Below are positions 4,774 through 55,925 of a stretch of DNA of 64,000 bases, in pieces. Numbering within the stretch: position 1 is the first letter of the stretch; every line of letters begins with the position of its first letter. This stretch comes from Hyaloraphidium curvatum SAG 235-1. Lineage: Eukaryota; Fungi; Monoblepharomycota. The notes below the pieces were generated by a model that did no database searches, was not told the origin of the DNA, and was given only the letters and a program-made list of their open reading frames with translations. The DNA is taken from contig JAIVFI010000024.1 of assembly GCA_025558095.1 (NCBI GenBank), forward strand, positions 496,001 to 560,000, read 5' to 3'. The position numbers were made by a program, and so were the translations under genes.

Positions 4774-4852
4774 ATTTATGCTCGTGCGAAGCTTCCCGGA
4801 GCGTCAAAGTAGATTGCAAATAAGTGTAGAAGCTTACATCCATCAGTCGCGG

Positions 4853-6024
4853 TTACTCTGCCTTCTTGGCCTCCAGATCGATCAGCTTCTCGGTGATCTC
4901 GTGGTCGCGCGAGTCGAACTCGTCGCTCTCGTTCTGGTACACGACCGGCCCACCGCCTCCCTTGGCAGCCTCCCTGCGCTTCTTCTCGAATCCACGCCAC
5001 TTCATCGTGATCCAGAAGGTCCAGATGAAGTTGAGCGAGCCCATCAAGGTCACGTTTGTCACGGTGAGCAGCTTGACCATGAACGGCATCTCCTTGAAGC
5101 GCTCCAGGAACGGTCTCACTCCGCCAACGTTTCCAAAGGCATAGTACAGCGTGTAAGGGAAGACCCAAACACGGAAAACGAAGAAGGAGAGGGCGCGCGT
5201 GAAGAGTGTCGCCGACAGCAGCTTCACCGCACGGGGATCGGAAGAGATGTGCGCAGAGCGCGAGGAAAACGAGGTGGCCTGGGGCACTGGCGGCGCGGTA
5301 GACGAGGTAGACGCGGCGCCCTTCGTGGCGCTCTTGGCCGCTATGCCGTCGGCGTTGGCCCGTCGCGGCGCGTATTCGGCAAGGTATAGGGGGTAGATCT
5401 TCTGGACATACCACAGCATGTTGGTGGTAAAGGCGGTGAGCTCCGTCTGCGTGAAGCAGGTCGGTGAGAGTCTGGGCGGGAACGAGGCCTCAAAAAACTC
5501 ACCAGTCCGAAAAAGACGGGGAAGTAGACCAGCTGCCGGTGGGTCAGAATGGTCAGCGCTCCGCTGATGCCCATGGCATGGTGAAGCCACATGGTCCAAT
5601 GCTCTCCTCCCTGTAGATGCATGACGATGGCATCGCTGCACGAGCCGCGATGAATTGTCGTCCCTCGGATCCGGGTGTCAACCCACTAGAGAACGTAGCC
5701 AAGGTAGTTCGAGAACATGTCGTCCACGAGCGGCGGGTACGCGTCAAAGACGGCGCCCGGCGGGCGGAACGCCTGGTCCCGGAAGCAGACGAGGATGCTG
5801 GACACCGACAGCATGACCGAGTTGGCGGTCGAGCAGACCTTCTCGTCCATGTGCAGGCGGTCCTTTCGGCTCAGCCGGTCCACCACGCGGCTCCCAAATA
5901 GCCGGACGAAAACGCGATCCGCCGCGTAGTGCAGAGTCCACATTCCTACGAAGGCTCCGGCGATGCGCGGCAAGTTGATTTCGGCGAGGGACGCCAGCGC
6001 CCTGGACATTAGGTCCGCGGCCAT
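4853..6024 (-). CDS. TLC (TRAM/LAG1/CLN8) domain membrane protein, TMEM56/TLCD4-like
   Basis: Spliced reading GYVLYDAIVMH..WLHH...FFGL|TELT..TNMLW...FFVFRVW...LNFIWT matches TLC motifs; two GT-AG introns. Confidence 0.85.
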
Positions 6025-6999
6025 CCTCAGCAACAAATCGTGCCAAAAGTGACTTCAGTAGGGCGCGCAGCGCGCAGGTCCGCCAGAGCCCGGACGGAAG
6101 ATGTTGTGGCGGCTGGCGACCGCCGCCGGGGTCAAAACCCCGCCGACCTCGCCGAAGCAGACGTGGGTGAACGAATAAGAAGGGGAGTATTTGACGAACC
6201 GATCGGTCTGTTGATGCTATGGTACAGATGTCTCTAGTCTGGGTATCGTCCGAGTCCGTCGACTTGACTCCCTGTCTCGATCGCACGGTCCGGGGGTGAC
6301 CACACCCCGGACAGCGCGACCGAAGTAGGAGATCCGCCGCCGTACTCCTTACCTTGAACCGCGCTTCCCCAGCCTCAGCTTGTCGAAAAGCTTCCGGTAC
6401 CACTTGCGCTTGACCTCGGGCTCGGGCGCCTGCGAGACGTCCCCCGGGAGCGGATGCGAGTCCGAGATCGGGATACGGGGCCTACCTGGCAGTGCTCTCG
6501 AAAGGCCGCGCTCCGATCAGGCCGCTGAGCGAGCCGCCGCTCCTGGAGGACGACGAGGCGGAGGAGGGCAAGGACGAGGCGGCGATCGACGGGGAAACGG
6601 AGCGCGCCGAGTCGGGCGCCACAACCGTAGCCATGCAACGTTCGAAGGGCATTTGGCGGCGTGATCGGCTCCCCGCGGGAAAGGCCGATCTTCGAGTGCC
6701 TTCTCGTGTTTACATTCGCACCGAATTGATTGCGTGCTGCGCAGCGCCAGGTTGATGATTGGCGGCGCGGGAAGACCCCGGCATTCAGGGACTTCCGCGC
6801 CGCGATCGCAAACCCGGCCTCTGATCCACTCTTCCAGCAGCGATTGGCTGCGAGAGAGGGGAGCGTGGGAGGAGCGGAGCAGCATCCATCGCTGCATTCG
6901 GCGTTCGGAGAACTTCCAGTGCGGAGCAGTCGCCGCTTCGCACGGCCGTCCCCCACGGACGTGGCCGCAAGTGTCGACCCCCCAGTTCAGTAACACAGA

Positions 7000-9900
7000 A
7001 TGTCGTCGTCTGGCGTGGGTTTGCTTTTCTCGGCAGTTATATTTCACCACGCTCACGCGCCCCTGACCGGAATCGTGCCCTGCTCGCGATTCCCATCTCC
7101 CTCGCGGTCGCTCCCACCCGCTCGGACCCTGATCCCGCTGCGATGCAACGATGCAACCCGCAGTGGTTCTCCTCGATCTTCGGGTCAGGGTCGACCGCCG
7201 ACGCCAGCAAGGAGGCCGCCGAGGCCGTCGAATCGGCGGCCAACGAGGCCATCGAGGCGGTCGAGTCCGCCCTCAAGGGCACGGCGTCCCCGGCCCTCAA
7301 GGACGCCGCTGCCGCGGTGGACAAGGCGCTCTCCGAGGCCAAGAACTCGCCGAGCAGCGCGTCGCCAACCAGCGCCAGCAGGGGCTGGTTCAGTTTCGGT
7401 GCGTTGTCTCTCCTTCGCTGCGTGCATCGGTTGACCCGCACTCCCAGGTTCCGGAACGAAGGCAACTTTGACCTCTATCACGGTTCCCAACTGGGCATCC
7501 AAATGGGTCCCCGGAAAGCCAGTCGAGGTGGCCTGGACAGGCACAGGGCTCGAAGGAAACACGGTCCGCATTGAGCTGTGGAAGGACATACCGCTCCTGC
7601 CCGACGTGCTGATCGGCGTGCTCGAGGACGGCCACGACGCCGCGTCCCTCAAGTGGAATGGCCTGGTCGAGGTCGAAATTCCTCCCGGTGAGGTCTACTA
7701 CGTCGTCGTCTCCGTCGAAGGGAGCCCGCAGGTCAGGGTCCAGAGTGCCGATTTCGAGATCAAGGCCGCCGCCAGCGGCGAGACGGCTTCCGGAGAGTTC
7801 GAGGAGATCGTCGCAGAGGACCTACCTCCCGTCGATGCGGCGCAAGAGCCCGTCGCTGCGGCGTCGACCAGGTCGCTGGAAGCCGCTCCGGCTGCCGCCG
7901 CACAGCCTGCGGGCACCGACGGGTCGCCCGTTGCCGCCGATGAGGACGATGTCCAGCTTGGGACGGCCGTGGGCTCCAAGATCGGAGGATACGCCAGCGA
8001 CGGCCGTGAGTGCGTCGTCGGAAACTGGTGACGCATCGCATGCTTACTCCGGTTGCAGCCGCCATCGTCATTCATCGCCCGAACAAGCGGAGCGTGCTCC
8101 GCAACACCATCAAGGTCCGCTGGAGCTCGAGCAACGTCGATCCGGAGACGCCCCTTCGGCTTACCTTGTGGGACGATCTGCCGTGGCTCCCGGACGTTCG
8201 CTTGGCCACGTTCTCGGCCACGCCTCTCACTGTGGGCACTGGTGAATGCACATGGGTTCTGCCCCAGGGCATCGTTGCGTCGTCGCACAAGCGCTACTAC
8301 GTTCTGGCCGAAACGATCGGAAACCCCGAGGGCGACGTGCGGACGCAGTCGGTGGCTTTCCCAGGCCCCAAGACCGACGGAAACGTGCAGGAATCGGCCT
8401 TAGCGCCGGCTGCCGAGGCTGCACCCACCGTGCGAACGAGTGGTGAGATCTCTGTGCAGCTCCTAAACATCTGGCGACGCTAACCGCACGTGCAGCGGCA
8501 TCCAAAACCGACGCTGCCGTGCCTGAGGAAGTGTCAAAGACGCTCGATGCTCCGACTGCGGATACGGCCGCTGGCAAGGACAAGGAGGCCATCGCCGGCG
8601 AGGAGACGGAGACCCTCATCAGCACCGTGCAAGACACCGTCCAGGGCACCCTGCGCTCCCTTGCGTCCCTGTTCAGCTTCGGCGGCAGCCCGTCACCCGC
8701 AACGGACGCTCCCGTCGGCGAATGGGATCCCCAGGCCGTGGCGGTCGGCGACGAATTGCCTGGCTGGGTGAAAGCCATTCGGTCTCTGCCGGACGACATC
8801 AAGGCGAGCGAGCTGCCCGACTGGACCGACCTGATCGCTTCCGACGGCGACATCCCGGCCGAGCTGCTCAAGGCATCGGGCGAGGACCTGCAGCCGTGGA
8901 TTGCTGCATTGCGTAGTCTTCCCGAACCAAGGAAGAGCGCGCTCCCGGACTGGGCGGCATCTGTGTCGAAGAATATCTCCCCGGCTGCCAAGAAGAAGAT
9001 CGTCGAGGCCATCAAGGACACGCTGCCCGACATCATCGAGGAAGCCGCAGCCGAGGCGGCCGAGGAGACTCAAGCGAAGGCCGAGATCGAGGCAGCGCCG
9101 AAAAGCAGGTCCCTGCCCCAAGCTGAAGGCGGGGAGGAAGAGTTCTCCGAGGACGAGGACGGCGAGGAAGCCGCCGACGACGAAGTCTACTGGGCTCACG
9201 CCATGGAGCTTCCCAACCTCGCCGAGAACCCCGAGAGCCTCGCACCGTGGGCCAAGAGAGTCAGGGCTGCGATGCCTCCGGACGTGCAAGAGGCGCTGGA
9301 CGAGCTCGCCAAGCTGGCCGAGGAGAACTCCCAGGTCGACGAGGACGGCGACGGGGTCCCTGATTACATTCAACGTGCCCAGGAGCTCCCGGCGTTGAAG
9401 GGACCCGGGGACGTGCCGTTGTTCATTTCCAAAGCTCGCGCTATGGCCCAGGCGCTCCCTGGGAAGGCGAAGCAGGTTCCTGCGGACGTGAAGCCCGAAG
9501 AAACCGACCGTCTCATCGAAGCTCTCGACGGAGCGCTCGGCGGCCTGTTCGCTGAGCAGGAGGTATGTGACACGTGCCGAACTTCCAAACAACAGCTGAC
9601 CGAATCCAGCCAACGCAGAAGCAGAGTGCACCGGAAACAGCCGCTCTGGCTTCTGCATCGTCGCAGCCGCCGTCCTCCATCAAGCCTGACCCCAGTACGT
9701 GTTGCAGTACGAACTCACACGTGCAGTACGTGACGGACTTTCTGCTTCAGGCCTCGTCCAGCCCGTGCGGGGCGTCATTCTCGGGACCGCAGAAGAGCCC
9801 GAGAGGACCCAAGTGGACGCTCCTTCTGGAACCGAAGCCAAGCCGGGTCCGGAGAACATTAAGCCACGGTCTGGAGGCGTCGCTCCTGCAGAGATTTTCG

Positions 9901-12900
9901 AGGAGGAATCTGCGGAAAGCGACGTGCCAATCAAAGCTGGCGACCCCGGAACGGTCAAGACCGGAGGAGCTCCTGCTGCCGTGAGTAGACCCGAGCCGGT
10001 CCGCAACCCACCCGTATTGACCTCGCGTCAATTCAGTCTCGGGGAGCCCCTGCGACCGATGTTGCAGCAGCCGAGAAAGCTCTTGAGAAAGCAGAAGAAG
10101 CTTCAGCAAAGGTCTTTGATGACTTCGCCACGGACCTCGCCGCGTCGGTTGGCGACGCGCTAGCCGAAGCGGGCGCTGGCACGGACGATGCGATGGGAGA
10201 GCTCGCAGCCGCAGCCAAGGAAGACGTGCAGGACGGCATGGACGAGATCGCGGACGAGGTCGCGAAGGCGGGGGAGGCGCCGGGTGATGCCGCCGCCGGA
10301 GCCGAAAAGCCGGTTGGTGACGGCGCTGCCGCTGCCGAAAAAGCCCTCGGCGATGCCGCCGCTGAAGCGGAGAAGGCCCTAAGTGACATCGCCGCCGAGG
10401 CGGACAAGGTTCTGGGAGACGCTTCTGCGGGCGCGGAGAAAGTTCTCGGCGATGTGGCTCCTGCTGCTGAGAAAGCCTTCGGCGACGCCGCCGCTGGAGC
10501 CGAGAAGGCCCTAAGAGACATCGCCCCGGAGGCGGACAAGGCGTCTGGACCCGCTGCGGGCGCGGAGAAAGCTTTCGGCGACAGTGGCGCTACTCCCGTT
10601 GCCGTTGCAGAGGGCGCCCTCGCCAAAGCCGAGGCTGCCGAAGACAAGGAGCTCGACAAGGCCGCCGATGCGATCGCCGACGCGGTCGGGGATGCGCTCG
10701 TCAACGCCGAGGCTGGCGCCGAAAAGGCGCTGGACGACCTTGCCGCAGCCGCCAGCGCCGACGTTGCCGCTGGAGTGGACGCCGCCGGCCCCGAGATTAC
10801 CCGGCAGGACATTAAGGCTCCCGCGATCGCCGTCGCCGCCGCTCTTCCCGCCGTCGCCGCCGCTCTTCCCGCCGTCGCCGCCGCTCTTCCCGCCGTCGCC
10901 GCCGCGGTTGCCCTTCCCAAGGCTGCCGCCGTGCCGGCGGTCGAGGGCGTGCTCCCGAAGGGCGAGCTCACGCTGCCGCAAATCCCCGGCGTGGACCTCA
11001 AGGGAGTCGAGGCCGCCCTCGGCGACCTGAAAGCCGCGATCCCCGAGGCCGAGCTGGGCAAGCTGGAAGCTGCGCTGAAGGACATTGGCAAACCCGACTT
11101 CAAGCTGCCCGAGATCGCCGGCGTGGACCTGAAGGTGTGGTTGCCCAATAGCTTCGCTGAAGCTTCTCTAATGCGCTTCACATAGGGCCTGGAGACCGCG
11201 GTCAAGGACCTGAAGCTTCCCGATGCGCCGGCGCTGGATGCCGTTGTCGAGGAGGTCGTTGGCGAGGTCGACGTGCCTCTCAAGGCCCCCGAGATCAGCA
11301 CCGCGGCTCCCCAGGTGCCCAAGATCGATGCGGCGCTTCCTGACGCGCCCAAGCTTGAAGCCGCGCTGCCGGACGTGCCAAAGCTCGACGCCGCGCTGCC
11401 CGACGCGCCCAAACTCGATGCCGCGCTGCCCGATGTGCCAAAACTCGACGCTGCGCTTCCTGATGCGCCCAAGCTCGACGCTGCGCTTCCGACCCTCGCT
11501 GCCGCCGTGCCGGCGGTCGAGGGCGTGCTCCCGAAGGGCGAGCTCACGCTGCCGCAAATCCCCGGCGTGGACCTCAAGGGAGTCGAGGCCGCCCTCGGCG
11601 ACCTGAAAGCCGCGATCCCCGAGGCCGAGCTGGGCAAGCTGGAAGCTGCGCTGAAGGACATTGGCAAACCCGACTTCAAGCTGCCCGAGATCGCCGGCGT
11701 GGACCTGAAGGTGTGGTTGCCCAATAGCTTCGCTGAAGCTTCTCTAATGCGCTTCGCATAGGGCCTGGAGACCGCGGTCAAGGACCTGAAGCTTCCCGAT
11801 GCGCCGGCGCTGGATGCCGTTGTCGAGGAGGTCGTTGGCGAGGTCGACGTGCCTCTCAAGGCCCCCGAGATCAGCACCGCGGCTCCCCAGGTGCCCAAGA
11901 TCGATGCGGCGCTTCCTGACGCGCCCAAGCTCGACGCTGCGCTTCCGACCCTCGCTGCCGCCGGGCCGGCGGTCGAGGGCGTGCTCCCGAAGGGCGAGCT
12001 CACGCTGCCGGAAATCCCCGGCGTGGACCTCAAGGGAGTCGAGGCCGCCCTCGGCGACCTGAAAGCCGCGATCCCCGAGGCCGAGCTGGGCAAGCTGGAA
12101 GCTGCGCTGAAAGACATTGGCAAACCCGACTTCAAGCTGCCCGAGATCGCCGGCGTGGACCTGAAGGTGTGGTTGCCCAATAGCTTCGCTGAAGCTTCTC
12201 TAATGCGCTTCGCATAGGGCCTGGAGACCGCGGTCAAGGACCTGAAGCTTCCCGATGCGCCGGCGCTGGATGCCGTTGTCGAGGAGGTCGTTGGCGAGGT
12301 CGACGTGCCTCTCAAGGCCCCCGAGATCAGCACCGCGGCTCCCCAGGTGCCCAACATCGATGCGGCGCTTCCTGACGCGCCCAAGCTCGACGCTGCGCTT
12401 CCGACCCTCGCTGCCGCCGGGCCGGCGGTCGAGGGCGTGCTCCCGAAGGGCGAGCTCACGCTGCCGGAAATCCCCGGCGTGGACCTCAAGGGAGTCGAGG
12501 CCGCCCTCGGCGACCTGAAAGCCGCGATCCCCGAGGCCGAGCTGGGCAAGCTGGAAGCTGCGCTGAAGGACATTGGCAAACCCGACTTCAAGCTGCCCGA
12601 GATCGCCGGCGTGGACCTGAAGGTGTGGTTGCCCAATAGCTTCGCTGAAGCTTCTCTAATGCGCTTCGCATAGGGCCTGGAGACCGCGGTCAAGGACCTG
12701 AAGCTTCCCGATGCGCCGGCGCTGGATGCCGTTGTCGAGGAGGTCGTTGGCGAGGTCGACGTGCCTCTCAAGGCCCCCGAGATCAGCACCGCGGCTCCCC
12801 AGGTGCCCAAGATCGATGCGGCGCTTCCTGACGCGCCCAAGCTCGACGCTGCGCTTCCGACCCTCGCTGCCGCCGGGCCGGCGGTCGAGGGCGTGCTCCC

Positions 12901-15900
12901 GAAGGGCGAGCTCACGCTGCCGGAAATCCCCGGCGTGGACCTCAAGGGAGTCGAGGCCGCCCTCGGCGACCTGAAAGCCGCGATCCCCGAGGCCGAGCTG
13001 GGCAAGCTGGAAGCTGCGCTGAAAGACATTGGCAAACCCGACTTCAAGCTGCCCGAGATCGCCGGCGTGGACCTGAAGGTGTGGTTGCCCAATAGCTTCG
13101 CTGAAGCTTCTCTAATGCGCTTCGCATAGGGCCTGGAGACCGCGGTCAAGGACCTGAAGCTTCCCGATGCGCCGGCGCTGGATGCCGTTGTCGAGGAGGT
13201 CGTTGGCGAGGTCGACGTGCCTCTCAAGGCCCCCGAGATCAGCACCGCGGCTCCCCAGGTGCCCAACATCGATGCGGCGCTTCCTGACGCGCCCAAGCTC
13301 GACGCTGCGCTTCCGACCCTCGCTGCCGCCGGGCCGGCGGTCGAGGGCGTGCTCCCGAAGGGCGAGCTCACGCTGCCGGAAATCCCCGGCGTGGACCTCA
13401 AGGGAGTCGAGGCCGCCCTCGGCGACCTGAAAGCCGCGATCCCCGAGGCCGAGCTGGGCAAGCTGGAAGCTGCGCTGAAGGACATTGGCAAACCCGACTT
13501 CAAGCTGCCCGAGATCGCCGGCGTGGACCTGAAGGTGTGGTTGCCCAATAGCTTCGCTGAAGCTTCTCTAATGCGCTTCGCATAGGGCCTGGAGACCGCG
13601 GTCAAGGACCTGAAGCTTCCCGATGCGCCGGCGCTGGATGCCGTTGTCGAGGAGGTCGTTGGCGAGGTCGACGTGCCTCTCAAGGCCCCCGAGATCAGCA
13701 CCGCGGCTCCCCAGGTGCCCAAGATCGATGCGGCGCTTCCTGACGCGCCCAAGCTCGACGCTGCGCTTCCGACCCTCGCTGCCGCCGGGCCGGCGGTCGA
13801 GGGCGTGCTCCCGAAGGGCGAGCTCACGCTGCCGGAAATCCCCGGCGTGGACCTCAAGGGAGTCGAGGCCGCCCTCGGCGACCTGAAAGCCGCGATCCCC
13901 GAGGCCGAGCTGGGCAAGCTGGAAGCTGCGCTGAAGGACATTGGCAAACCCGACTTCAAGCTGCCCGAGATCGCCGGCGTGGACCTGAAGGTGTGGTTGC
14001 CCAATAGCTTCGCTGAAGCTTCTCTAATGCGCTTCGCATAGGGCCTGGAGACCGCGGTCAAGGACCTGAAGCTTCCCGATGCGCCGGCGCTGGATGCCGT
14101 TGTCGAGGAGGTCGTTGGCGAGGTCGACGTGCCTCTCAAGGCCCCCGAGATCAGCACTGCGGCTCCCCAGGTGCCCAAGATCGATGCGGCGCTTCCTGAC
14201 GCGCCCAAGCTCGACGCTGCGCTTCCGACCCTCGCTGCCGCCGGGCCGGCGGTCGAGGGCGTGCTCCCGAAGGGCGAGCTCACGCTGCCGGAAATCCCCG
14301 GCGTGGACCTCAAGGGAGTCGAGGCCGCCCTCGGCGACCTGAAAGCCGCGATCCCCGAGGCCGAGCTGGGCAAGCTGGAAGCTGCGCTGAAAGACATTGG
14401 CAAACCCGACTTCAAGCTGCCCGAGATCGCCGGCGTGGACCTGAAGGTGTGTCACACCACTAGCATGCAGAACACCGCGCCTAACTGTTGCGCTCGTTGC
14501 AGGGGCTTGAGGCTGCCGTCAAGGATGTGAAGCTGCCGGAGCTGGCGGTGCCGTCGCTGGACGCGCCTTCGATCTCGGCCTCGCTGCCCGACGCGCCCAA
14601 ACTCGATGCCACGCTGCCCGATGTGCCAAAACTCGACGCTGCGCTTCCTGATGCGCCCAAGCTCGACGCTGCGCTTCCGACCCTCGCTGCCGCCGTGCCG
14701 GCGGTCGAGGGCGTGCTCCCGAAGGGCGAGCTCACGCTGCCGCAAATCCCCGGCGTGGACCTCAAGGGAGTCGAGGCCGCCCTCGGCGACCTGAAAGCCG
14801 CGATCCCCGAGGCCGAGCTGGGCAAGCTGGAAGCTGCGCTGAAGGACATTGGCAAACCCGACTTCAAGCTGCCCGAGATCGCCGGCGTGGACCTGAAGGT
14901 GTGGTTGCCCAATAGCTTCGCTGAAGCTTCTCTAATGCGCTTCGCATAGGGCCTGGAGACCGCGGTCAAGGACCTGAAGCTTCCCGATGCGCCGGCGCTG
15001 GATGCCGTTGTCGAGGAGGTCGTTGGCGAGGTCGACGTGCCTCTCAAGGCCCCCGAGATCAGCACCGCGGCTCCCCAGGTGCCCAAGATCGATGCGGCGC
15101 TTCCTGGCGCGCCCAAGCTTGAAGCCGCGCTGCCGGACGTGCCAAAGCTCGACGCCGCGCTGCCCGACGCGCCCAAACTCGATGCCGCGCTGCCCGATGT
15201 GCCAAAACTCGACGCTGCGCTTCCTGATGCGCCCAAGCTCGACGCTGCGCTTCCGACCCTCGCTGCCGCCGTGCCGGCGGTCGAGGGCGTGCTCCCGAAG
15301 GGCGAGCTCACGCTGCCGCAAATCCCCGGCGTGGACCTCAAGGGAGTCGAGGCCGCCCTCGGCGACCTGAAAGCCGCGATCCCCGAGGCCGAGCTGGGCA
15401 AGCTGGAAGCTGCGCTGAAGGACATTGGCAAACCCGACTTCAAGCTGCCCGAGATCGCCGGCGTGGACCTGAAGGTGTGTCACACCACTAGCATGCAGAA
15501 CACCGCGCCTAACTGTTGCGCTCGTTGCAGGGGCTTGAGGCTGCCGTCAAGGATGTGAAGCTGCCGGAGCTGGCGGTGCCGTCGCTGGACGCGCCTTCGA
15601 TCTCGGCCTCGCTGCCCGACGCGCCCAAACTCGATGCCGCGCTGCCTGATGTGCCAAAATTCGACGCTGCGCTTCCTGATGCGCCCAAGCTCGACGCTGC
15701 GCTTCCGACCCTCGCTGCCGCCGTGCCGGCGGTCGAGGGCGTGCTCCCGAAGGGCGAGCTCACGCTGCCGCAAATCCCCGGCGTGGACCTCAAGGGAGTC
15801 GAGGCCGCCCTCGGCGACCTGAAAGCCGCGATCCCCGAGGCCGAGCTGGGCAAGCTGGAAGCTGCGCTGAAGGACATTGGCAAACCCGACTTCAAGCTGC

Positions 15901-18900
15901 CCGAGATCGCCGGCGTGGACCTGCAGGTGTGGTTGCCCAATAGCTTCGCTGAAGCTTCTCTAATGCGCTTCGCATAGGGCCTGGAGACCGCGGTCAAGGA
16001 CCTGAAGCTTCCCGATGCGCCGGCGCTGGATGCCGTTGTCGAGGAGGTCGTTGGCGAGGTCGACGTGCCTCTCAAGGCCCCCGAGATCAGCACCGCGGCT
16101 CCCCAGGTGCCCAAGATCGATGCGGCGCTTCCTGACGCGCCCAAGCTTGAAGCCGCGCTGCCGGACGTGCCAAAGCTCGACGCCGCGCTGCCCGACGCGC
16201 CCAAACTCGATGCCGCGCTGCCCGATGTGCCAAAACTCGACGCTGCGCTTCCTGATGCGCCCAAGCTCGACGCTGCGCTTCCGACCCTCGCTGCCGCCGT
16301 GCCGGCGGTCGAGGGCGTGCTCCCGAAGGGCGAGCTCACGCTGCCGCAAATCCCCGGCGTGGACCTCAAGGGAGTCGAGGCCGCCCTCGGCGACCTGAAA
16401 GCCGCGATCCCCGAGGCCGAGCTGGGCAAGCTGGAAGCTGCGCTGAAGGACATTGGCAAACCCGACTTCAAGCTGCCCGAGATCGCCGGCGTGGACCTGA
16501 AGGTGTGTCACACCACTAGCATGCAGAACACCGCGCCTAACTGTTGCGCTCGTTGCAGGGGCTTGAGGCTGCCGTCAAGGATGTGAAGCTGCCGGAGCTG
16601 GCGGTGCCGTCGCTGGACGCGCCTTCGATCTCGGCCTCGCTGCCCGACGCGCCCAAACTCGATGCCGCGCTGCCCGATGTGCCAAAACTCGACGCTGCGC
16701 TTCCTGATGCGCCCAAGCTGGAGGCATCCTTACCCGATGCACCGATTCTTGTGGCCGCGCTTCCCGCGTTGGCCGCTGCCGTGCCCGCTATTGAGGCGGT
16801 CCTTCCGAAGGGCGAGCTCAAGCTCCCCGAGATTCCGGGCGTCGACCTGAAGGGAGTCGAGGCCGCGCTTGGCGAGATCAAGGCCAAGCTGCCCGAGGCC
16901 GACCTGGGAAAACTGGAAGTTGCGCTCAAGGACATAGGGAAGCCAGAGTTCAAGCTCCCTGAAATCCCCGGCGTCGATCTCTCTGTAAGGATTTGGAGCT
17001 GCCATCCAGGTGATGCGTCTTACCGCCTTGTCTTCAGGGTCTTGATGCAGCGGTTAAGGGGGTCACTCTTCCGGAGCTCAAGGCCCCGGAACTTCCGTCG
17101 CTCGACGTCAAGCTGCCTTCCATCGACGCAAAAGTGCCCGACATTAAGGCCGAGCTCCCCTCGCTCGACGCGAAGCTGCCAGAGCTCAAAGCGCCCGAGA
17201 TTCCGTCTATTTCGGCCGCTCTCCCGGACGTCAAGGCCCCCGAGCTGCCCTCTCTCGACGCGAAGCTGCCAGAAATCACGGCCCGAGCGCTGCCTACCAT
17301 TGACGCCACTTTGCCGGAGCTCAAAGCCCCCGAGCTGCCCTCTATCGACGCGAAGCTGCCAGAGCTCAAAGCGCCCGAGATTCCGTCTATTTCGGCCGCT
17401 CTCCCGGACGTCAAGGCCCCAGAGCTGCCCTCTCTCGACGCAAAGCTGCCAGAAATCACGGCCCGAGCGCTGCCTACCATTGACGCCACTTTGCCGGAGC
17501 TCAAAGCCCCCGAGCTGCCCTCTATCGACGCGAAGCTGCCAGAGCTCAAAGCGCCCGAGATTCCGTCTATTTCGGCCGCTCTCCCGGACGTCAAGGCCCC
17601 AGAGCTGCCCTCTCTCGACGCAAAGCTGCCAGAAATCACGGCCCGAGCGCTGCCTACCATTGACGCCACTTTGCCGGAGCTCAAAGCCCCCGAGCTGCCC
17701 TCTATCGACGCGAAGCTGCCGGAGCTCAAAGCGCCCGAGATTCCGTCTATTTCGGCCGCTCTCCCGGACGTCAAGGCCCCGGAGCTGCCCTCTATCGACG
17801 CGAAGCTGCCAGAGCTCAAAGCGCCCGAGATTCCGTCTATTTCGGCCGCTCTCCCGGACGTCAAGGCCGCGGAGCTGCCCTCTATCGACGCGAAGCTGCC
17901 AGAAATCACGGCCCGAGCGCTGCCTACCATTGACGCCACTTTGCCGGAGCTCAAAGCCCCCGAGCTGCCCTCTATCGACGCGAAGCTGCCAGAGCTCAAA
18001 GCGCCCGAGATTCCGTCTATTTCGGCCGCTCTCCCGGACGTCAAGGCCCCGGAGCTGCCCTCTATCGACGCGAAGCTGCCAGAAATCACGGCCCGAGCGC
18101 TGCCTACCATTGACGCCACTTTGCCGGAGCTCAAAGCCCCCGAGCTGCCCTCTATCGACGCGAAGCTGCCGGAGCTCAAAGCGCCCGAGATTCCGTCTAT
18201 TTCGGCCGCTCTCCCGGACGTCAAGGCCCCGGAGCTGCCCTCTATCGACGCGAAGCTGCCAGAGCTCAAAGCGCCCGAGATTCCGTCTATTTCGGCCGCT
18301 CTCCCGGACGTCAAGGCCGCGGAGCTGCCCTCTATCGACGCGAAGCTGCCAGAAATCACGGCCCGAGCGCTGCCTACCATTGACGCCACTTTGCCGGAGC
18401 TCAAAGCCCCCGAGCTGCCCTCTATCGACGCGAAGCTGCCAGAGCTCAAAGCGCCCGAGATTCCGTCTATTTCGGCCGCTCTCCCGGACGTCAAGGCCCC
18501 GGAGCTGCCCTCTATCGACGCGAAGCTGCCAGAAATCACGGCCCGAGCGCTGCCTACCATTGACGCCACTTTGCCGGAGCTCAAAGCCCCCGAGCTGCCC
18601 TCTATCGACGCGAAGCTGCCGGAGCTCAAAGCGCCCGAGATTCCGTCTATTTCGGCCGCTCTCCCGGACGTCAAGGCCCCGGAGCTGCCCTCTATCGACG
18701 CGAAGCTGCCAGAGCTCAAAGCGCCCGAGATTCCGTCTATTTCGGCCGCTCTCCCGGACGTCAAGGCCGCGGAGCTGCCCTCTCTCGACGCGAAGCTGCC
18801 GGAGCTCAAAGCGCCCGAGATTCCGTCTATTTCGGCCGCTCTCCCGGACGTCAAGGCCCCGGAGCTGCCCTCTATCGACGCGAAGCTGCCAGAAATCACG

Positions 18901-21120
18901 GCCCGAGCGCTGCCTACCATTGACGCCACTTTGCCGGAGCTCAAAGCCCCGGAGCTGCCCTCTCTCGACGCGAAGCTGCCAGAGCTCAAAGCGCCCGAGA
19001 TTCCGTCTATTTCGGCCGCTCTCCCGGACGTCAAGGCCCCGGAGCTGCCCTCTCTCGACGCGAAGCTGCCAGAGCTCAAAGCGCCCGAGATTCCGTCTAT
19101 TTCGGCCGCTCTCCCGGACGTCAAGGCTCCGGAGCTGCCCTCTATCGACGCGAAGCTGCCAGAGCTCAAAGCGCCCGAGATTCCGTCTATTTCGGCCGCT
19201 CTCCCGGACGTCAAGGCCGCGGAGCTGCCCTCTCTCGACGCGAAGCTGCCAGAGCTCAAAGCGCCCGAGATTCCGTCTATTTCGGCCGCTCTCCCGGACG
19301 TCAAGGCCCCGGAGCTGCCCTCTCTCGACGCGAAGCTGCCAGAGCTCAAAGCGCCCGAGATTCCGTCTATTTCGGCCGCTCTCCCGGACGTCAAGGCCCC
19401 GGAGCTGCCCTCTATCGACGCGAAGCTGCCAGAGCTCAAAGCGCCCGAGATTCCGTCTATTTCGGCCGCTCTCCCGGACGTCAAGGCCCCGGAGCTGCCC
19501 TCTATCGACGCGAAGCTGCCAGAAATCACGGCCCGAGCGCTGCCTACCATTGACGCCACTTTGCCGGAGCTCAAAGCCCCGGAGCTGCCCTCTCTCGACG
19601 CGAAGCTGCCAGAGCTCAAAGCGCCCGAGATTCCGTCTATTTCGGCCGCTCTCCCGGACGTCAAGGCCCCGGAGCTGCCCTCTATCGACGCAAAGCTCCC
19701 TTCGATCGATGCAGCGTTGCCCGATGTGAACCTGGGCGACGTCAAGCTCCCAGAGATCCCCGGCGTGGAGCTCGCAGGCGTCAAGGCGGCCCTTGGCGAC
19801 CTCAAGCTGAAGATGCCCGAGGCCGACTTTGGCAAGCTCGAGGCGTCGCTCGGCGACATTGGCAAGCCCGGCTTCAAGCTCCCGGAGATCCCCGGGGTCG
19901 ACCTTTCGGTACGTCGTAGTCTCGTGTCGGTTTCGGGCAGGTCTCTGATCACCTCTACTCGCAGGGTCTTGATGCGGAGATCAAGGGTTTGAAGCTGCCG
20001 GAGGTCGCGTTGCCCGCGGTTGCTTTGGACGCGAAGCTACCATCTGTCGATCTCCCTTCGGTCGACGTCAACCTCCCGACCGTGGATGCTTCCCTGCCCA
20101 GCATTTCGGGCGACTTCAAACTCCCCGAAATTCCCGGCGTCGATCTCGGCGGCGTCAACGCGGCCCTCGGCGACCTCAAGATGAAGATGCCGCAAGCGGA
20201 CTTTGACAGCATGTTGGGCTCGCTCAAGGGTATCGGCACCCCGGGATGGAAGCTCCCGAACCTGTCGGCCATGTTCCCGGGCATCGACTTCAAGGTACGC
20301 ATGAACTCATGCCCCGCGCGATCCCTCCCTGACGCTCCGCCGTCCAGCCCCTCGGTGTCGCCGTCGCCGGTGCCCTGGGCGTCGCGGTGAGCACCGACGC
20401 CCCCGTGACGGCAGAGAGCGTGGACCGCCTCCAGGCCGCGGCCCGCTACCGCGTTTTGGCCATGATTGACTTCGCAAGCGCCATCATGCGCGAACGCATG
20501 CCTGCTGCGGTGGGTTGGACATGCATTCGTGACGGACGGAGCGCTGATTCGCATCTTCATGCAGCACAAGCGCTACACGCGCGGGGGCAAGTCGATCTAC
20601 GCCCCGATCGCCTCGGGCGAAGAGCTCCAGCGGAACGCAGGGCAAGACTTTGTCGCCTCGTTCCGTGCGGAAAACCTGGATCGGAAGGACTTCCTAGGCA
20701 AGAGCGATCCGTACCTCCGCGTCCTGCGCCCGACGCGCGAGGGCGGCCTCATCCCGATCGCCGACACCGAGGTCGTGCCCAAGGAGCTGAACCCCAAGTG
20801 GAAGCCGCTCGCGCTGCACGTCGACGCCCTGTGCCGTGGTGACATGGACGTGCCCCTCCTGTTCGAAGTCTGGGATTCAGATCAGGGGAGCGATGATGAC
20901 TTTATCGGTTTCGCCGAGGCGAGCGTCAACGACCTCATCAAGGCCGCAGGCGGGCGGGTCAAGTTCCCGCTTATCAACCCGTCGCTCGCAAAGAGCAAGA
21001 AGAACTACGTGGACTCCGGGAAGCTGATCGTGAGTGGGACCGCGCTCGCGCCCCCTGCGGTATCTGATCCCCCCGATCGCGCAGCTGGACACGTACAGCA
21101 TCACTCAGAAATCCGGGTAG
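7000..21120 (+). CDS. Giant (~4,250 aa) repeat protein: 2 Ig-like domains, acidic helical region, 11-mer repeats, AHNAK/periaxin-like repeats, C-terminal copine-type C2 domain
   Basis: 24 GT-AG introns: 7015-7163, 7399-7447, 8006-8058, 8443-8495, 9563-9609, 9695-9750, 9981-10036, nine 51-nt and three 56-nt repeat introns, 16985-17037, 19909-19964, 20295-20347, 20510-20564, 21030-21084. Removing them gives one open frame of 12,759 nt ending GKLILDTYSITQKSG*. C2 motifs: NLDRKDFLGKSDPYL, TEVVPKELNPKW, FEVWDSD..SDDDFIG. Confidence 0.8.
10926..16984 (+). repeat. Tandem array of exon+intron units (456-bp units, then 1,028-bp higher-order units)
   Basis: Near-identical ORFs recur every 456 bp (11849, 12305, 12761, 13217, 13673, 14129) and every 1,028 bp (14488, 15516, 16544). 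Each unit includes its intron. Confidence 0.95.
17134..19700 (+). repeat. Coding minisatellite of 45-bp (15-aa) monomers arranged as 90- and 180-bp higher-order units
   Basis: Monomers PELKAPEIPSISAAL, PDVKAPELPS(L/I)DAKL, PEITARALPTIDATL and PELKAPELPSIDAKL; roughly 57 monomers in total. Confidence 0.95.
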
Positions 21121-21596
21121 AGTAACGTAACTGTCGTATGCTATGGCGTGTAGACAACCAAACTGCGTCGCAATCTATTGTTCTGCTGTCGTTCAATCGT
21201 GGCAGGTGACCCAGAGACGGGCTGTGCACGTAAAGTTACGGTCCAAGCTTTCCTGCTACTCGAAGGCCGTCTGATCGCATCAATCGCGATCAGGTTCTCA
21301 CGCTTTTGTCGCCCAACGGTGACTGGTGTGATCGGTGGCGAAGAGGATTGGGGTATGGGAGTCACGGACCTGCATTGGCATCTGAGCGGCACCGGACCCC
21401 CGGAAAGTGAGACTAGGGTTATCAATTGGCAGATGTACGTGGTCCATGCCACCGTGCAAGCATCACGGAACGCGCGCATCGAGCCGAGATAGCAATGGTG
21501 GGTGGCTGTGTGGCCTCACCTCCACCCGAGTTCAGCCGGAACCGAAGCCCGCGTGACCTCGGACACACCATTCGAAGCTGCTCACCGCCTGCAAAC

Positions 21597-22332
21597 ATGA
21601 CCCGGCTCGCCTCCGCATTCCGGGCGGCGCTTGCGCCGACGTGCGCCGCCCGCTCAGCCGGCCTCGCGCGCGTCCGCGCTCCCCGCGTCGCTGTTGCGGC
21701 CCGCGCGATCGCGTCGTCCGCCGCCGCGCGCGCGCCGAGCCCCGCGGCGCGCCCGCTGCCGCCGCCGGCCGAGCTGCTGCACTCATTCGACGAGGACCTC
21801 TCCGCGCTGTTCGACCGCGACGGCCGCGGCGCTGGCGAGGCGCTGGCAGCCGAGCCCTTCGCCGCAGACTTCTTCTTCGACCAGCCGCAGCTGGACGACG
21901 CCTCGGAGGAGGAGGCGCTGCGAGCCGTGCTGGAGGGAGGTCGGTGGTTTCATCTCCTTCGCCGGGGCCTTGTTTGACGCCCGATCGCAGAGTACAAGCG
22001 CCACCTGTACCAGAGCCGCCGCACGTCGCCCACGCTCGGCTCGATGGGCGACTACGTGCAGCTCTTCGAGGAGGCCAACCCGCCGGAGCTCGCGCCGTAC
22101 TACAAGCGCCGACTACAAGCGCCGGCTTTCAGCACCACGACGTCGGTGTTCGAGGGCATGGACGAGGAGGCCAACCCGCCTGAGATGTCTCCCGGTGAGC
22201 ACCTCCGGCGGCCCGGCTCTTCGGTGGCGGTCGCTGACGGCCCGCATGCCCCTCCCAGAGTTCAAGCGCAACCTGAAGGAGCACGCCCGCCCGCTCCTCG
22301 AGCGCCTCGTCATCCCCGGCGGGTCCAGCTAG
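21597..22332 (+). CDS. Hypothetical protein with mitochondrial-presequence-like N-terminus (3 exons)
   Basis: Arg/Ala/Ser-rich, acid-free N-terminus. Introns ~21940-21990 and ~22195-22258 join three ORF segments; strong GC3 coding bias. Confidence 0.6.
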
Positions 22333-22756
22333 GCGCTGGCCGCCCGGCACCCGCCAGCACTGTAGATACCGCTCGATTGCCAACCGTGTGGCCCGCGTGA
22401 CGGCCGGAACTGTGTATTGCCATCGTATGTTGTTGTGATTCCTGGCGCGATTGTGTGCGAGTGAGGGGACAGGCGATCTTGGATGGGAATGAATGCTGTC
22501 TGCTTGAAGTGATTTGAATTGATTGGTGTTGCTACATCCTCACGATCTCGCTCTGGGGCCGATGCCTCATCAATACCTCTCTCGCACACTGTCCGCTCGT
22601 ATTCGTCCATCACTCAACAGGATGGCCTTCCACATCATCCAATCCTTCTTCAATATCGGTTGCTGCCGCACTGCCCGAGAAGCCGCGTTATCCTGGGGTT
22701 AAATCATCGCGTTGCGCGAGCTCACCATGCTGTCGATGGTCCGCATGCTGCGCATG

Positions 22757-23869
22757 CTACTCGCTAGCACTCGTCGCCATCGCTTCCTTGGTGGCGCGCG
22801 GCGGGGACCTGGCCTTGATGGGGTTCTGCAAGTCCGGCAGCAGCCTCCGAAGCTTGTTGAAGTCCCCACCCCACATCGTGATATAGGGCTCTCCGTCCTG
22901 CATCCGCACGAGCTCCACTCGGGCGGGTGGCTCGTGGAGGCGCCCGAGCAGGTCCCAGATCGTTTCGCGCCAGAAGCTATCGGGGAGCCCGGCGTCTTCG
23001 CAGCCACGGATCCGGATGCACTGCGGGGCAAACCTGGGGGTGCCGACGGCCGCCTCGAGCTGGTTGGGGTAGATCTCCACGCGCGCAACACGGAAGAACT
23101 GCAAGACACTGGCGAGGCGCGGATGTCCGTGGAGATCGGCAAGCCTTTCCACGTCGCCCGACTCGATCGGCCATTCGAACCCTTTGGGCGAGGTGAAGCG
23201 GAGAGCTTCAAGGCCCGGAAACATGGCATCTACTCGTACCAGAATTCCTTCATGTTCAAGGGGTGCACACCCAGGGTTTCGACCTTCAAGCACTTGACCT
23301 GAGGCACAATGGGCCTCAGGGGGTGGCTGAAGGCATGGAAGTTCGACAGCGAAATGGTGACTTCTTCGGGGTCCGGCCCCGCGTGCGAAAGGAGGCGGCA
23401 CAGATGCCAGTCGTTGTCCCGCAGTGCGCTGTCCGGGCCACGAGACATCGAGGGCTGCGCCATATAGCAACCGCGACTGCCTTGAGCTGCGGCATGAACC
23501 TGATTCCGATCTTGATGAGGGGTTCCTCGTACAAGAACGACAAGTCGCAGCGGAGATCGAGGCTTCGAACGTGTGCGAACCTGCCCTCCGGGGCCATGGT
23601 CCTCACTTCGTTCTCCCACGAGGAAGGCTTCCGCCAGACTTCTTGGATCGCCAGCTCATTCATCAGAGCCGGCATCCCGGCCTCGTAGGTAACATTGCTG
23701 CAGCGCACGAACTTCGCAAGAGTGCCCCGGAGGCGGGCCGCGGCGAGCTGCTCGGCAACGGCCGTGAGGACCTTGGGGGGGGGGGCGCGAGTGATGCAAC
23801 GGAGGGCGAGCCGGCAGCAGCACTTTCGGGCGGCAGGATGGCGGGGCCGACAACAAGAGACGCTTCCAT
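22757..23869 (-). pseudogene. Frameshifted F-box-like protein pseudogene
   Basis: Protein-like sequence switches frame several times without usable splice sites (SLAP/PKVLTAVAEQLAAARLRGTLAKFVRCSNVTYEAGMPAL...). The first shift is at a G11 run, 23775-23785. Confidence 0.5.
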
Positions 23870-24129
23870 CGTCGTGTGGTGCCAGTGAACGAGAGAGCGG
23901 CAGAAACGGCGGGGGGTCCTCCGAATGGTTGCTCCGGTGAATGTGATGGCAGGTCGGGCGGCTCTAGTACCATGTACAGACCAAACCAAAATGTCGTGCG
24001 ACTCCCGGTCGGGCACGAAAACCGCGAGCAGATCGGGAGACTACCCTTCAATAATGCCGTTTCATAGGAGACCGCCTCACGTCTATTCAACAAAGAACCT
24101 CCGATGCTTCAGATTTCAATCATCGCCCA

Positions 24130-24884
24130 CCGGGCATCGACTTCAAGGTACGCATGAACTCGTGGCCCGCGCGATCCCTGCTGACGCTCCGCCCCAGCCC
24201 CTCGGTGTCGCCATCGCTGGTGCCCTGGGCGTCGCGGTGAGCACCGACGCCCCCGTGACGGCAGAGAGCGTGGAGCGCCTCCAGGGCGCGGCCCGCTACC
24301 GCGTTTTGGCCCTGATCAACTTCGCAAGCGCCATCATGCGCGAACGCATGCCTGCTGCGGTGGGTTGGACATGCATTCGTGACGGACGGAGCGCTGATTC
24401 GCATCTTCATGCAGCACAAGCGCTACACGCGCGGGGGCAAGTCGATCTACGCCCCGATCGCCTCGGGCGAAGAGCTCCAGCGGAACGCAGGGCAAGACTT
24501 TGTCGCCTCGTTCCGTGCGGAAAACCTGGATCGGAAGGACTTCCTAGGCAAGAGCGACCCCTGTCTTCGCGTCCTGCGCCCGACGCGCGAGGGCGGGCTC
24601 ATCCCGATCGCCGACACCGAGGTCGTGCCCAAGGAGCTGAACCCCAAGTGGAAGCCGCTGGCGCTGAACGTCGACGCCCTGTGCCCCGGTGACATGGACG
24701 TGCCCCTCCTGTTCGAAGTCTGGGATTCAGATCAGGGGAGCGATGATGACTTTATCGGTTTCGCCGAGGCGAGCGTCAACGAGCTCATCAAGGCCGCCGG
24801 CGGGCGGGTCAAGTTCCCGCTCATCAACCCGTCGCTCGCAAAGAGCAAGAAGAACTACGTGGACTCGGGGAAGCTGATCGTGAG
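24130..24884 (+). pseudogene. Duplicated fragment of the giant gene 3' end (pre-C2 and C2 exons, with introns)
   Basis: Near-identical to 20277-21034 including two introns. Substitutions include DPY->DPC. No upstream exon and no terminal exon. Confidence 0.85.
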
Positions 24885-54981: not shown

Positions 54982-55261
54982 GGCGGCGGCGGTGCGGAGA
55001 GGTTTGCTCGAAGCAGGTTGCCGAGGTCGCCGACTGGAGGTGGGCGTGGGGGACGTGTTTACCCGCGACGTCAATTTAGGCTCCGCCGTTGCTGCTTCGA
55101 ATCTCGAGCGCCGACCGGAAGCGCATCTCAGGTGCAGTTGTAAGAAGTGGATGTCTCCTTGCAGCTCCACGAGCGATTCGGTCTAGGTAGACAAAGATGC
55201 CGCTGCTCAGTTGCCAGCTTTGTCCTCAGCTCCCCCTCTGCTCGTCAACCCCCGCCTCCCC

Positions 55262-55689
55262 CTGTCGAGTATCAACTCTGCCGCCTCGCTGATGCTCCAA
55301 AAGATGCCCACGTCGGCCCGCAAGTTCGTCGTCGACGGCAAGAGCACGTACATGCCCAAGGTCGGCATCGAGGAGCTCGCCAAGAACGCCGGGCAGGACC
55401 TCGTGCTCAACCTGAGGGCCGAAAAGGTGAGAATCGGTACTGCATAGCGAGTCCGCAAGGCTAACAGCGAGATTTTTTTGAGTTGGACAAGCGCGACAGC
55501 GGCTTCCTCGGGTTCGGCGGCAAAGGCAGCGATCCGTTCCTCGTCATCAGCCGGCCGAGCCGCGAGGGCGGCCTGGTGCCGATCGTGCAGACCGAGGTGG
55601 TGCCCAAGAACCTGAACCCCACGTGGCAGCCGCTGCGTCTGCACCTGGACGCCCTGTGCCGCGGAGACTTGGACGTGCCGCTTCTGCTC
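55262..55689 (+). pseudogene. Truncated fragment of a diverged paralog of the giant gene's pre-C2+C2 region
   Basis: GKSTYMP..EELAKNAGQD..RAEK|LDKRD..GSDPFL..RPSREGGLVPI..TEVVPKNLNPTW..LDALCRGDLDVPLL aligns to 20450-20862. It has its own intron (55427-55482); similarity stops mid-C2. Confidence 0.75.
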
Positions 55690-55925
55690 CGCTCCGAGGA
55701 TGCCGTCGCCGGGACTCTTCCTCCCCTGTTTCGTGCCCCAGAACGTGCTGAACAGCGCCCACGCCAATGACACGGTAGACGACATGGCACGGGAGCAGAC
55801 GAGCACTGACACTCGCAAGCCACTCCTTCCAGCGCAAATGAAGCGGCGGCGGCTTGACGAACACGTCCCCGTTCGGCTGACCCTCGCACATGGCCTCCTC
55901 AAGCAGCTCGCACTTCTTCCAATCC

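What the first reader, a model, noticed from the sequence alone, without database searches (positions are those of the whole stretch)
7000..21120. Hidden ~4,250-aa giant protein: AHNAK/periaxin-like repeats capped by a Ca2+-type C2 domain
Seen: about 20 fragmentary ORFs join through 24 canonical introns into one frame. Domain order: GWF motifs, two Ig-like domains, an acidic helical region, 11-mer repeats, roughly 2,900 aa of P-E/D-L/I/V-K-rich repeats, a short unknown domain, then a copine-like C2 with its Asp ligands. No signal peptide or TM helix. Known: AHNAK/periaxin use similar Pro-spaced repeats as membrane scaffolds, and AHNAK works with the C2 protein dysferlin in Ca2+-triggered membrane repair. 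Inference: a convergent one-chain Ca2+-dependent membrane tether, spring or wound-repair scaffold in a fungus.
Basis: partly seen in the sequence, partly recalled or inferred. Interest (0 to 1): 0.8.

Follow-up and report, generated by a model that had tools for sequence, protein, structure and literature searches.

The report
Giant AHNAK-like repeat protein with C2
A freshwater early-diverging fungus (Hyaloraphidium curvatum) has an expressed, apparently unannotated gene for a protein of about 4,250 residues: a very long proline-punctuated repeat rod resembling vertebrate AHNAK and periaxin, ending in a calcium-type C2 membrane-binding domain.

Summary
On the + strand, 25 exons joined by 24 GT..AG introns give one frame from 7000 to 21120: 4,252 aa, 434 kDa, pI 4.4. 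A spliced transcript contig with no mismatches confirms the last four introns. It puts the C2 exon on the same RNA as the last repeat exons. Two environmental RNA runs confirm two of those introns. Introns 1-20 are inferred from splice signals, frame and GC3.

The C2 domain is solid (Pfam 8.6e-14). Its best solved relative is the copine BONZAI1 C2B, and all five acidic Ca2+-ligand positions are present.

The AHNAK/periaxin likeness is measurable. The 957-aa repeat exon finds only vertebrate AHNAK-like and periaxin proteins (E 1e-33 to 5e-16), and shuffled or reversed queries score below zero. There is no PDZ domain and the gene has many introns, so membership is not shown.

The genome is Hyaloraphidium curvatum. 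It holds a roughly 1,900-aa paralog with the same repeats and C2, and a third gene with the same repeat unit ending in SH3. Three environmental fungal fragments show the same junction from repeat to helix to C2. No public predicted protein contains this C2 exon.

The function, a cytosolic Ca2+-recruited membrane scaffold, is inferred. A wound-repair role has no support. Sibling first-reader notes on this window had already flagged parts of this gene.

The parts
7000..7014 (+). Exon 1 with the proposed start codon (MSSSG). An alternative start is the ATG at 7143, inside the proposed intron 1.
   Evidence: Splicing 7015-7163 creates a GWF motif like the second one. Paralog B also begins M-SWF. 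No RNA check.
7164..7398 (+). Exon 2: GWF motifs flanking an Ala/Glu-rich segment.
   Evidence: GC3 0.94.
7448..8005 (+). Exon 3: beta-sandwich domain 1 plus an acidic linker.
   Evidence: Pfam PF10342 3.3e-4, below cut-off. AF2 model has 8 strands, pLDDT 61, pTM 0.52. Foldseek gives only weak beta-sandwich hits.
8059..8442 (+). Exon 4: beta-sandwich domain 2, a paralog of domain 1.
   Evidence: 28% identical to domain 1 with shared W, LW.D.P.LPDV and YYV motifs. Pfam PF10342 0.05.
8496..9562 (+). Exon 5: acidic region of 355 aa with LPxW micro-repeats. No known family.
9610..9980 (+). Exons 6 and 7 (9610-9694 and 9751-9980), separated by intron 9695-9750.
   Evidence: Hand-placed intron. It removes the need for the weak intron the automatic model placed at 10144-10214. 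GC3 is only 0.61-0.64.
10037..11134 (+). Exon 8: acidic helical part, 11-residue repeats (about 10289-10581), Ala/Pro/Val tract (21-bp repeat 10828-10905) and the first core repeat unit (10973-11134).
   Evidence: One open frame from 9989 to 11182 links the non-repeat part to the repeats. TRF periods of 33 and 132. Homologous exon in paralog B.
11186..16984 (+). Exons 9-20: twelve exon-plus-intron cassettes (exons of 396, 405, 426 or 525 nt; phase-0 introns of 51 or 56 nt). Each exon ends in a core unit.
   Evidence: TRF period 456, 8.1 copies, 94% match. Introns listed. Copies are 99-100% identical at protein level. These introns were not checked with reads.
17038..19908 (+). Exon 21: 957 aa, 56 regular 15-residue monomers of four main types, then core unit 14.
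   Evidence: TRF periods 180, 270 and 450. Monomer census. The only database matches are AHNAK-like and periaxin. X1 contigs cover its 3' end.
19965..20294 (+). Exon 22: last, diverged core unit.
   Evidence: On the spliced X1 contig. The intron before it is confirmed by X1 and X4.
20348..20509 (+). Exon 23: Ala/Gly/Val-rich stretch plus a conserved helix (..IDFASAIMRERMP..).
   Evidence: Spliced in X1 and X6. The helix is conserved in paralog B and in L026, L028, L029 and P0036.
20565..21029 (+). Exon 24: lead-in strand and C2 domain (Pfam match about 20658-20957).
   Evidence: PF00168 8.6e-14. BONZAI1 C2B 7e-21. Acidic positions D42, D48, D104, D106 and D112 of the exon are conserved in the family.
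21085..21120 (+). Exon 25: last 11 codons and the TAG stop.
   Evidence: Intron 21030-21084 is skipped in the X1 contig.
21121..21447 (+). 3' untranslated stretch covered by the same transcript contig.
   Evidence: table 8, record 1.
24130..24884 (+). A 96.4% identical DNA copy of 20277-21034: the helix exon, its two flanking introns and the C2 exon, without the last exon.
   Evidence: Its 5' junction is seen in an independent DNA contig of X2 (table 5c). C2 Pfam 7.6e-13.

Best explanation
This is one expressed gene of Hyaloraphidium curvatum. It encodes a cytosolic, strongly acidic protein of about 434 kDa that is mostly extended.

Shown:
- The reading frame.
- The splicing and expression of the C-terminal part.
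- A bona fide C2 domain with all five acidic Ca2+-ligand positions.
- A 2,900-residue repeat region with a proline about every 7 residues, whose ordered motif resembles AHNAK and periaxin.
- The same repeat unit in two further genes of this genome, ending in C2 or in SH3.

Inferred: the C2 domain, with the conserved helix in front of it, docks the C-terminal end onto acidic phospholipid membranes when Ca2+ rises. The repeat rod could reach on the order of a micrometre if fully extended. It carries 15 short helical core units that may act as spacer and interaction sites. The N-terminal WF motifs and the two beta-sandwich domains would hold a second, unknown partner. Together this would make a long membrane-cortex scaffold or tether whose targeting head is exchangeable.
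For: - One frame through 24 canonical short introns; high GC3 in most exons; lower GC in 22 of the 24 introns.
- RNA contig joining the repeat exons to the C2 exon with 0 mismatches, plus two independent environmental RNA runs.
- C2: Pfam 8.6e-14, BONZAI1 C2B 7e-21, ligand positions conserved across family members.
- Paralog B has the same order: WF N-terminus, 11-mers, cores, 15-mer array, helix, C2.
- Gene C has the same cores plus SH3, PF00018 2.2e-12.
- Environmental relatives L026, L028 and L029 show the same core unit, intron, helix and C2 junction.
- No hydrophobic N-terminus or clean transmembrane window.
- AHNAK/periaxin similarity: E down to 1e-33, negative scores for shuffles; profile match at 90% probability.
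- Most common Pro-Pro spacing is 7 and the mean is 7.03, as described for AHNAK (PMC2196192).
Against: - Introns 1-20 and the start codon are unverified by RNA.
- Retaining intron 9981-10036 would end a shorter protein at 10163.
- Retaining a 51-nt cassette intron would stop at its TAG.
- Repeat copy number rests on one assembly.
- Kre9/KNH-like domains are usually extracellular.
- AF2 gives low confidence for the repeat unit (pLDDT 54), so rod or spring behaviour is conjecture.
- No experiment bears on Ca2+, lipid binding or localisation.
- H. curvatum is, to my knowledge, a walled unicell, so the cellular need for such a tether is unknown.
Confidence: 0.6

Rival explanations
1. The locus is two or more transcription units or isoforms. 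For example, an N-terminal protein with the beta-sandwich and acidic parts (exons 1-7), and a separate repeat-plus-C2 protein starting in exon 8, like paralog B, which lacks the beta-sandwich part.
For: The N-terminal exon has no paralog in the genome and no homolog. Paralog B has a different N-terminus. Exons 6 and 7 have the weakest GC3. Introns 1-7 were not checked with reads.
Against: All seven introns have good donor, branch and acceptor signals and the usual 47-56 nt length. The homologous exon of paralog B also starts at an acceptor, not at a start codon. No promoter or stop signal is evident between the two parts.
Confidence: 0.12
2. The repeats are true homologs of AHNAK and periaxin. 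An ancient opisthokont repeat scaffold would survive in vertebrates and in this fungal lineage, rather than arising by convergence.
For: The only significant hits among 5.8 billion proteins in the 526-1675 aa length band are AHNAK-like and periaxin. The similarity depends on residue order. The profile match extends into the core unit.
Against: - No PDZ domain in any exon.
- A multi-intron gene against the intronless AHNAK (PMC2196192).
- Identity of only 27-31% over short amplified motifs, which converge easily.
- HMMER bias terms are very large.
- No intermediate taxa are known. The search was limited by length band and to 8,000 candidates.
Confidence: 0.15
3. The gene is real, but its size is not. 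The near-identical 456-bp cassettes and the 2.5-kb minisatellite are mis-sized by the assembly, so the protein may be much shorter or longer.
For: Cassette copies are 99-100% identical. The short DNA contigs of X2 cannot span the arrays.
Against: The copies carry ordered variants, such as an alternating Lys/Asn site, two intron types and a 1,028-bp higher-order unit. That pattern fits real tandem duplication. The assembly has only 55 contigs.
Confidence: 0.15
4. It is not a Ca2+-switched tether. Instead it is a disordered, hydrophilic protectant or condensate-forming protein, with LEA-like 11-mers and a polyampholyte rod, whose C2 gives only constitutive membrane affinity.
For: Low AF2 confidence. 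The 11-residue repeats are expanded in paralog B. The charge is extreme: 728 acidic against 402 basic residues.
Against: All five acidic ligand positions are kept across diverged family members, which argues for selection on Ca2+ binding. The SH3-ended paralog points to specific protein docking.
Confidence: 0.13
5. It is a secreted or cell-wall proline-rich structural protein.
For: Weak Kre9/KNH-like matches. The repeats are proline-rich.
Against: No signal-peptide-like N-terminus. C2 and SH3 are, from general knowledge, typically intracellular modules. The Kre9 hits are below Pfam's threshold.
Confidence: 0.04

Closest known systems
AHNAK, AHNAK2 and periaxin (vertebrate giant scaffold proteins)
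   Same: - Very long arrays of short proline-centred motifs with alternating hydrophobic and charged residues.
- Higher-order units of about 130 aa (135 here, 128 in AHNAK).
- Predicted extended or disordered structure.
- Direct sequence similarity of the repeats.
- AHNAK reaches membranes through Ca2+-regulated partners, annexin A2 with S100A10 (PMC7072810).
   Different: No PDZ domain. The gene has many introns, whereas AHNAK is intronless. It is strongly acidic. A short helical hairpin core sits in each unit. The Ca2+-sensing membrane module is part of the same chain. It is a fungus, not a vertebrate.
Copines (for example Arabidopsis BONZAI1)
   Same: The C2 domain is most similar to the copine C2B among solved structures (7e-21), including the ..D.KD..GKSDP.. 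loop.
   Different: There is a single C2 at the C-terminus, and no second C2 or von Willebrand A domain in any exon scanned. A family-specific helix and lead-in strand precede the C2.
Ferlins (dysferlin)
   Same: Ca2+-type C2 domains on a large protein.
   Different: One C2 instead of five to seven, and no C-terminal transmembrane anchor.
Leashin, the giant repetitive Woronin-body tether of filamentous ascomycetes (from my own knowledge, not tested here)
   Same: A fungal, multi-thousand-residue, acidic, repetitive and presumably elastic tether with distinct binding ends.
   Different: No sequence relation was tested or seen. Leashin has no C2. To my knowledge H. curvatum is a non-hyphal unicell without Woronin bodies.

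Membership tests
C2 domain (PF00168) | Profile match above Pfam's gathering score | tested here: met
   52.1 bits against a cut-off of 22, E 8.6e-14. The copy and paralog B also match.
C2 domain, Ca2+-binding type | Five acidic ligand positions: two in loop 1 (D-x5-D within ..D..G.SDP..) and three in loop 3 (D-x-D-x5-D) | tested here: met
   D42, D48, D104, D106 and D112 of exon 24. They are conserved in the family; the last is Glu in two members. Mapping to ligand positions follows established knowledge of C2 domains.
C2 domain, Ca2+-binding type | Ca2+-dependent phospholipid binding | not testable with these tools
   Needs a liposome assay.
Copine | Two N-terminal C2 domains followed by a von Willebrand A (copine) domain | tested here: not met
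   Only one C2. No other Pfam domain above threshold in any exon.
AHNAK/periaxin | N-terminal PDZ domain | tested here: not met
   No PDZ match in exons 2-8.
AHNAK/periaxin | Long array of proline-centred heptad-like motifs in units of about 128 aa | tested here: met
   Modal Pro spacing 7, mean 7.03 over 2,903 aa. Exon units of 135 aa. Description of AHNAK taken from PMC2196192.
AHNAK/periaxin | Significant sequence similarity of the repeat domain | tested here: inconclusive
   E 1e-33 to 5e-16, with shuffles negative; hhalign 90%. Repeats inflate significance, so ancestry cannot be decided.
AHNAK/periaxin | Repeat domain encoded without introns (AHNAK) | tested here: not met
   24 introns, one per repeat cassette.
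Kre9/KNH-like Ig domain (PF10342) | Profile match above the gathering score | tested here: inconclusive
   21.8 and 14.8 bits against a cut-off of 24.6, but both cover nearly the whole profile. AF2 model is all-beta. No specific fold match.
Ferlin | [quoted passage not shown] | tested here: not met
   Single C2. The protein ends 11 residues after exon 24, without a hydrophobic tail.

The most novel reading that the evidence does not exclude
AHNAK-type micrometre-scale repeat scaffolds are not a vertebrate invention. An early-diverging fungal lineage has a family of them with exchangeable cortical heads (C2 or SH3). In this member the Ca2+ sensor that vertebrates supply through separate partners (annexin A2 with S100A10, dysferlin) is built into the same chain. 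That would make a one-protein Ca2+-triggered membrane-cortex tether.
Probability: 0.2. Interest if true: 0.8.

Novelty: new variant of a known kind. Interest (0 to 1): 0.62.

Why it matters
- It adds a large gene to a sparsely studied fungal lineage, and public protein sets miss at least its C-terminal part.
- It is a clear natural case of protein lengthening by duplicating whole exon-plus-intron cassettes.
- AHNAK/periaxin-like repeat chemistry would then exist outside vertebrates, which makes convergence against ancient origin testable.
- A compact C2 cassette bounded by phase-0 introns has been copied to several genes here. That makes a tractable model for how membrane-targeting heads are swapped onto scaffolds.

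Tried and rejected
- ESM Atlas look-up of the 135-aa unit: no usable hit.
- PDB profile search with the repeat alignment: nothing.
- Word search with the N-terminal beta-sandwich exon: no homolog.
- Word search with the C2 exon in its length band: only three distant small C2 proteins.
- Metagenome scan with the C2 alignment: two loci, both false positives from a bacterial enzyme.
- Literature searches for AHNAK with fungi or chytrids: nothing relevant.
- The 1,460-aa antisense ORF at 10033-14415 was rejected as a gene. It is the stop-free mirror of GC-rich repeats, and the intron signals and RNA joints run on the + strand.
- The automatic model's introns at 10144-10214 and 16985-17058 were replaced by 9695-9750 and 16985-17037 after reading the sequence.
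- The Ala/Gly/Val stretch before the C2 was considered as a transmembrane segment and rejected. It is only about 14 residues long and is not hydrophobic in the relative L026.
- The joined spliced protein was never sent to a search or fold tool. All searches were made exon by exon by reference. The joined form was built only inside scripts, for length, composition and hydropathy. For paralog B, the script printed a rough automatic joined model to its output.
Full report
**What is in the sequence**

The region is 63-69% GC. It holds two large tandem arrays: period 456 bp at 11445-15135, and periods 180/270/450 bp at 17152-19697.

The + strand ORFs read as sensible protein but are interrupted at regular points. 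The long minus-strand ORFs are Ser/Ala-rich mirrors of the repeats.

Each interruption is a short intron. An example is 12167-12217: GTGTGG, then CTCTAAT, then CATAG, 51 nt. It is in frame, and its only stop is the TAG that holds the acceptor.

**Gene model**

- A dynamic-programming model, corrected by eye at three places, gives 25 exons and 24 introns from 7000 to 21120.
- The product is 4,252 aa, 434 kDa, pI 4.36.
- GC3 in the chosen frame is 0.72-0.94 for most exons. It is 0.61-0.64 for the short exons 6 and 7.
- Intron GC is 0.49-0.63 for 22 of the 24 introns. Two confirmed C-terminal introns reach 0.68 and 0.73.

**RNA evidence**

Seven public runs hold part of 19700-21400. On 19650-24100, run X1 has a 1,399-nt contig with no mismatch. 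It skips 19909-19964, 20295-20347, 20510-20564 and 21030-21084, and then runs on to 21447.

That contig joins the end of exon 21, exon 22, the helix exon, the C2 exon and the last mini-exon. A wastewater metatranscriptome (X4) and a freshwater polyA library (X6) each confirm one of these introns.

The contig matches the parent gene, not the 96.4% copy at 24130-24884, and it starts upstream of the copy's boundary. So the C2 cap on the repeats is shown.

Introns 1-20 therefore rest on these points:
- their splice signals and frame;
- the cassette introns sitting at the same place (after ..GVDL[K/S], phase 0) as confirmed intron 19909-19964;
- paralog B having introns at the same places.

**Organism**

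Ninety-six Zn2Cys6 domains in the genome mark a fungus. A protein encoded at 55.2-55.8 kb of the window is KAI9015589.1 of Hyaloraphidium curvatum. It lies on a contig of 682,029 bp, which is the length of the window's contig. The lineage is Monoblepharomycota.

**Domains**

- *C2 domain.* Pfam PF00168 at 8.6e-14. The best solved relative is the copine BONZAI1 C2B at 7e-21. Acidic residues sit at all five canonical ligand positions and are kept in diverged relatives.
- *N-terminal domains.* The two domains are 28% identical to each other. They give sub-threshold but full-length Kre9_KNH matches. The AF2 model is all-beta, and Foldseek gives only generic beta-sandwich neighbours.
- *Other exons.* None matches any Pfam family; there is no PDZ and no copine A domain.
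- *Hydropathy.* There is no signal-like N-terminus. The most hydrophobic windows are proline-containing Ala/Val repeats.

**The repeats**

Fifteen copies of a core unit of about 54 residues are found. Each starts with ..LP.IPGVDL.. and ends with ..G.P.FKLP.I.GVDL.. They are separated by proline-punctuated spacers, including 56 regular 15-residue monomers of four main types.

AF2 with a 24-row alignment predicts only two short helices in the core and no confident structure elsewhere (pLDDT 54).

Over 2,903 residues, proline makes up 14.2%. The commonest Pro-Pro spacing is 7 and the mean is 7.03. That matches the published description of AHNAK's proline-centred heptads in 128-aa units (PMC2196192).

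The 957-aa exon was searched against 5.8 billion proteins in its length band. It found eight proteins, all vertebrate AHNAK-like or periaxin, at E 1e-33 to 5e-16. Global shuffles, same-permutation periodic shuffles and the reversed query all score below zero against the same proteins. A profile of the unit matches an AHNAK-like protein at 90% probability.

The likeness is therefore real at motif level. Repeats inflate such statistics, so ancestry stays open.

**Family**

The genome has three genes with this unit:
- this one;
- paralog B on the same contig, about 46 kb downstream on the minus strand. It is about 1,900 aa in a rough model, with the order WF motifs, 11-mers, seven cores, the same 15-mers, helix, C2;
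- gene C on another contig, with seven cores and a C-terminal SH3 domain.

The cassette of helix plus C2 also occurs in other places:
- as partial copies at 24130-24884 and 55211-55716;
- at the end of an unrelated 581-aa H. curvatum protein, KAI9009041.1.

Three environmental fragments from other fungi (L026, L028, L029) show the same core unit, intron, helix and C2 order. The intron before the C2 lead-in is conserved.

An exhaustive search of 1.84 billion cluster representatives with the C2 exon returned no identical or near-identical protein and no giant single-C2 relative. So the C2 exon of this gene is in no public predicted protein. To that extent, 'hidden' is justified.

**Interpretation**

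C2 and SH3 heads, the lack of export signals and the acidic extended rod all point to a cytosolic scaffold anchored at membranes or the cortex. Conservation of the ligand residues favours Ca2+-switched binding.

Tether length, elasticity, partners of the N-terminal end and any wound-repair role are conjecture.

**Limits**

- The spliced protein was searched exon by exon by reference only. No whole-protein search or fold was made.
- Array copy number was not verified.
- The AHNAK search was limited to proteins of 526-1,675 aa and to the 8,000 candidates sharing most words.

Noticed in passing
window 24130-24884: A 96.4% identical DNA copy of the parent's helix exon, two introns and C2 exon, lacking the last exon. 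Its frame runs on to a different short tail. Whether it is expressed or part of a small gene is unknown; X1 showed no contig up to 24100.
   Followed up: partly
window 55211-55716: A truncated copy of paralog B's helix-plus-C2 cassette. It is annotated in NCBI as the 118-aa hypothetical protein KAI9015589.1 and diverges in the middle of the C2.
   Followed up: partly
L023 2931-9763 (minus strand; G000:C24:562931-569763): Paralog B, about 1,900 aa in a rough automatic model. It has the same repeat units and C2 but WF-motif helical modules instead of the beta-sandwich domains, and a much longer 11-residue repeat array.
   Followed up: partly
L024 about 4100-7300 (G000:C20:26100-29300): Gene C: seven core repeat units in one 718-aa exon, followed by an SH3 domain (PF00018, 2.2e-12) and a second SH3-like stretch.
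   Followed up: partly
L025 about 3430-3820 (G000:C33:387430-387821): An isolated fragment 88-92% identical to part of the 135-aa unit. It breaks off inside the core and is probably a recent dead copy.
   Followed up: no
window 21558-22469: The next gene downstream on the + strand. It has two introns (about 21938-21989 and 22194-22258), both confirmed by a spliced X1 contig.
   Followed up: partly
window 10033-14415 (minus strand): A 1,460-aa stop-free antisense ORF rich in Ser and Ala. It is a by-product of the GC-rich repeat and could mislead gene finders.
   Followed up: yes
window 20295-20564: The exons of the C2 cassette are bounded by phase-0 introns, as are all repeat cassettes. This symmetry would let cassettes be duplicated or moved without breaking the frame, which fits the several copies seen.
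   Followed up: partly
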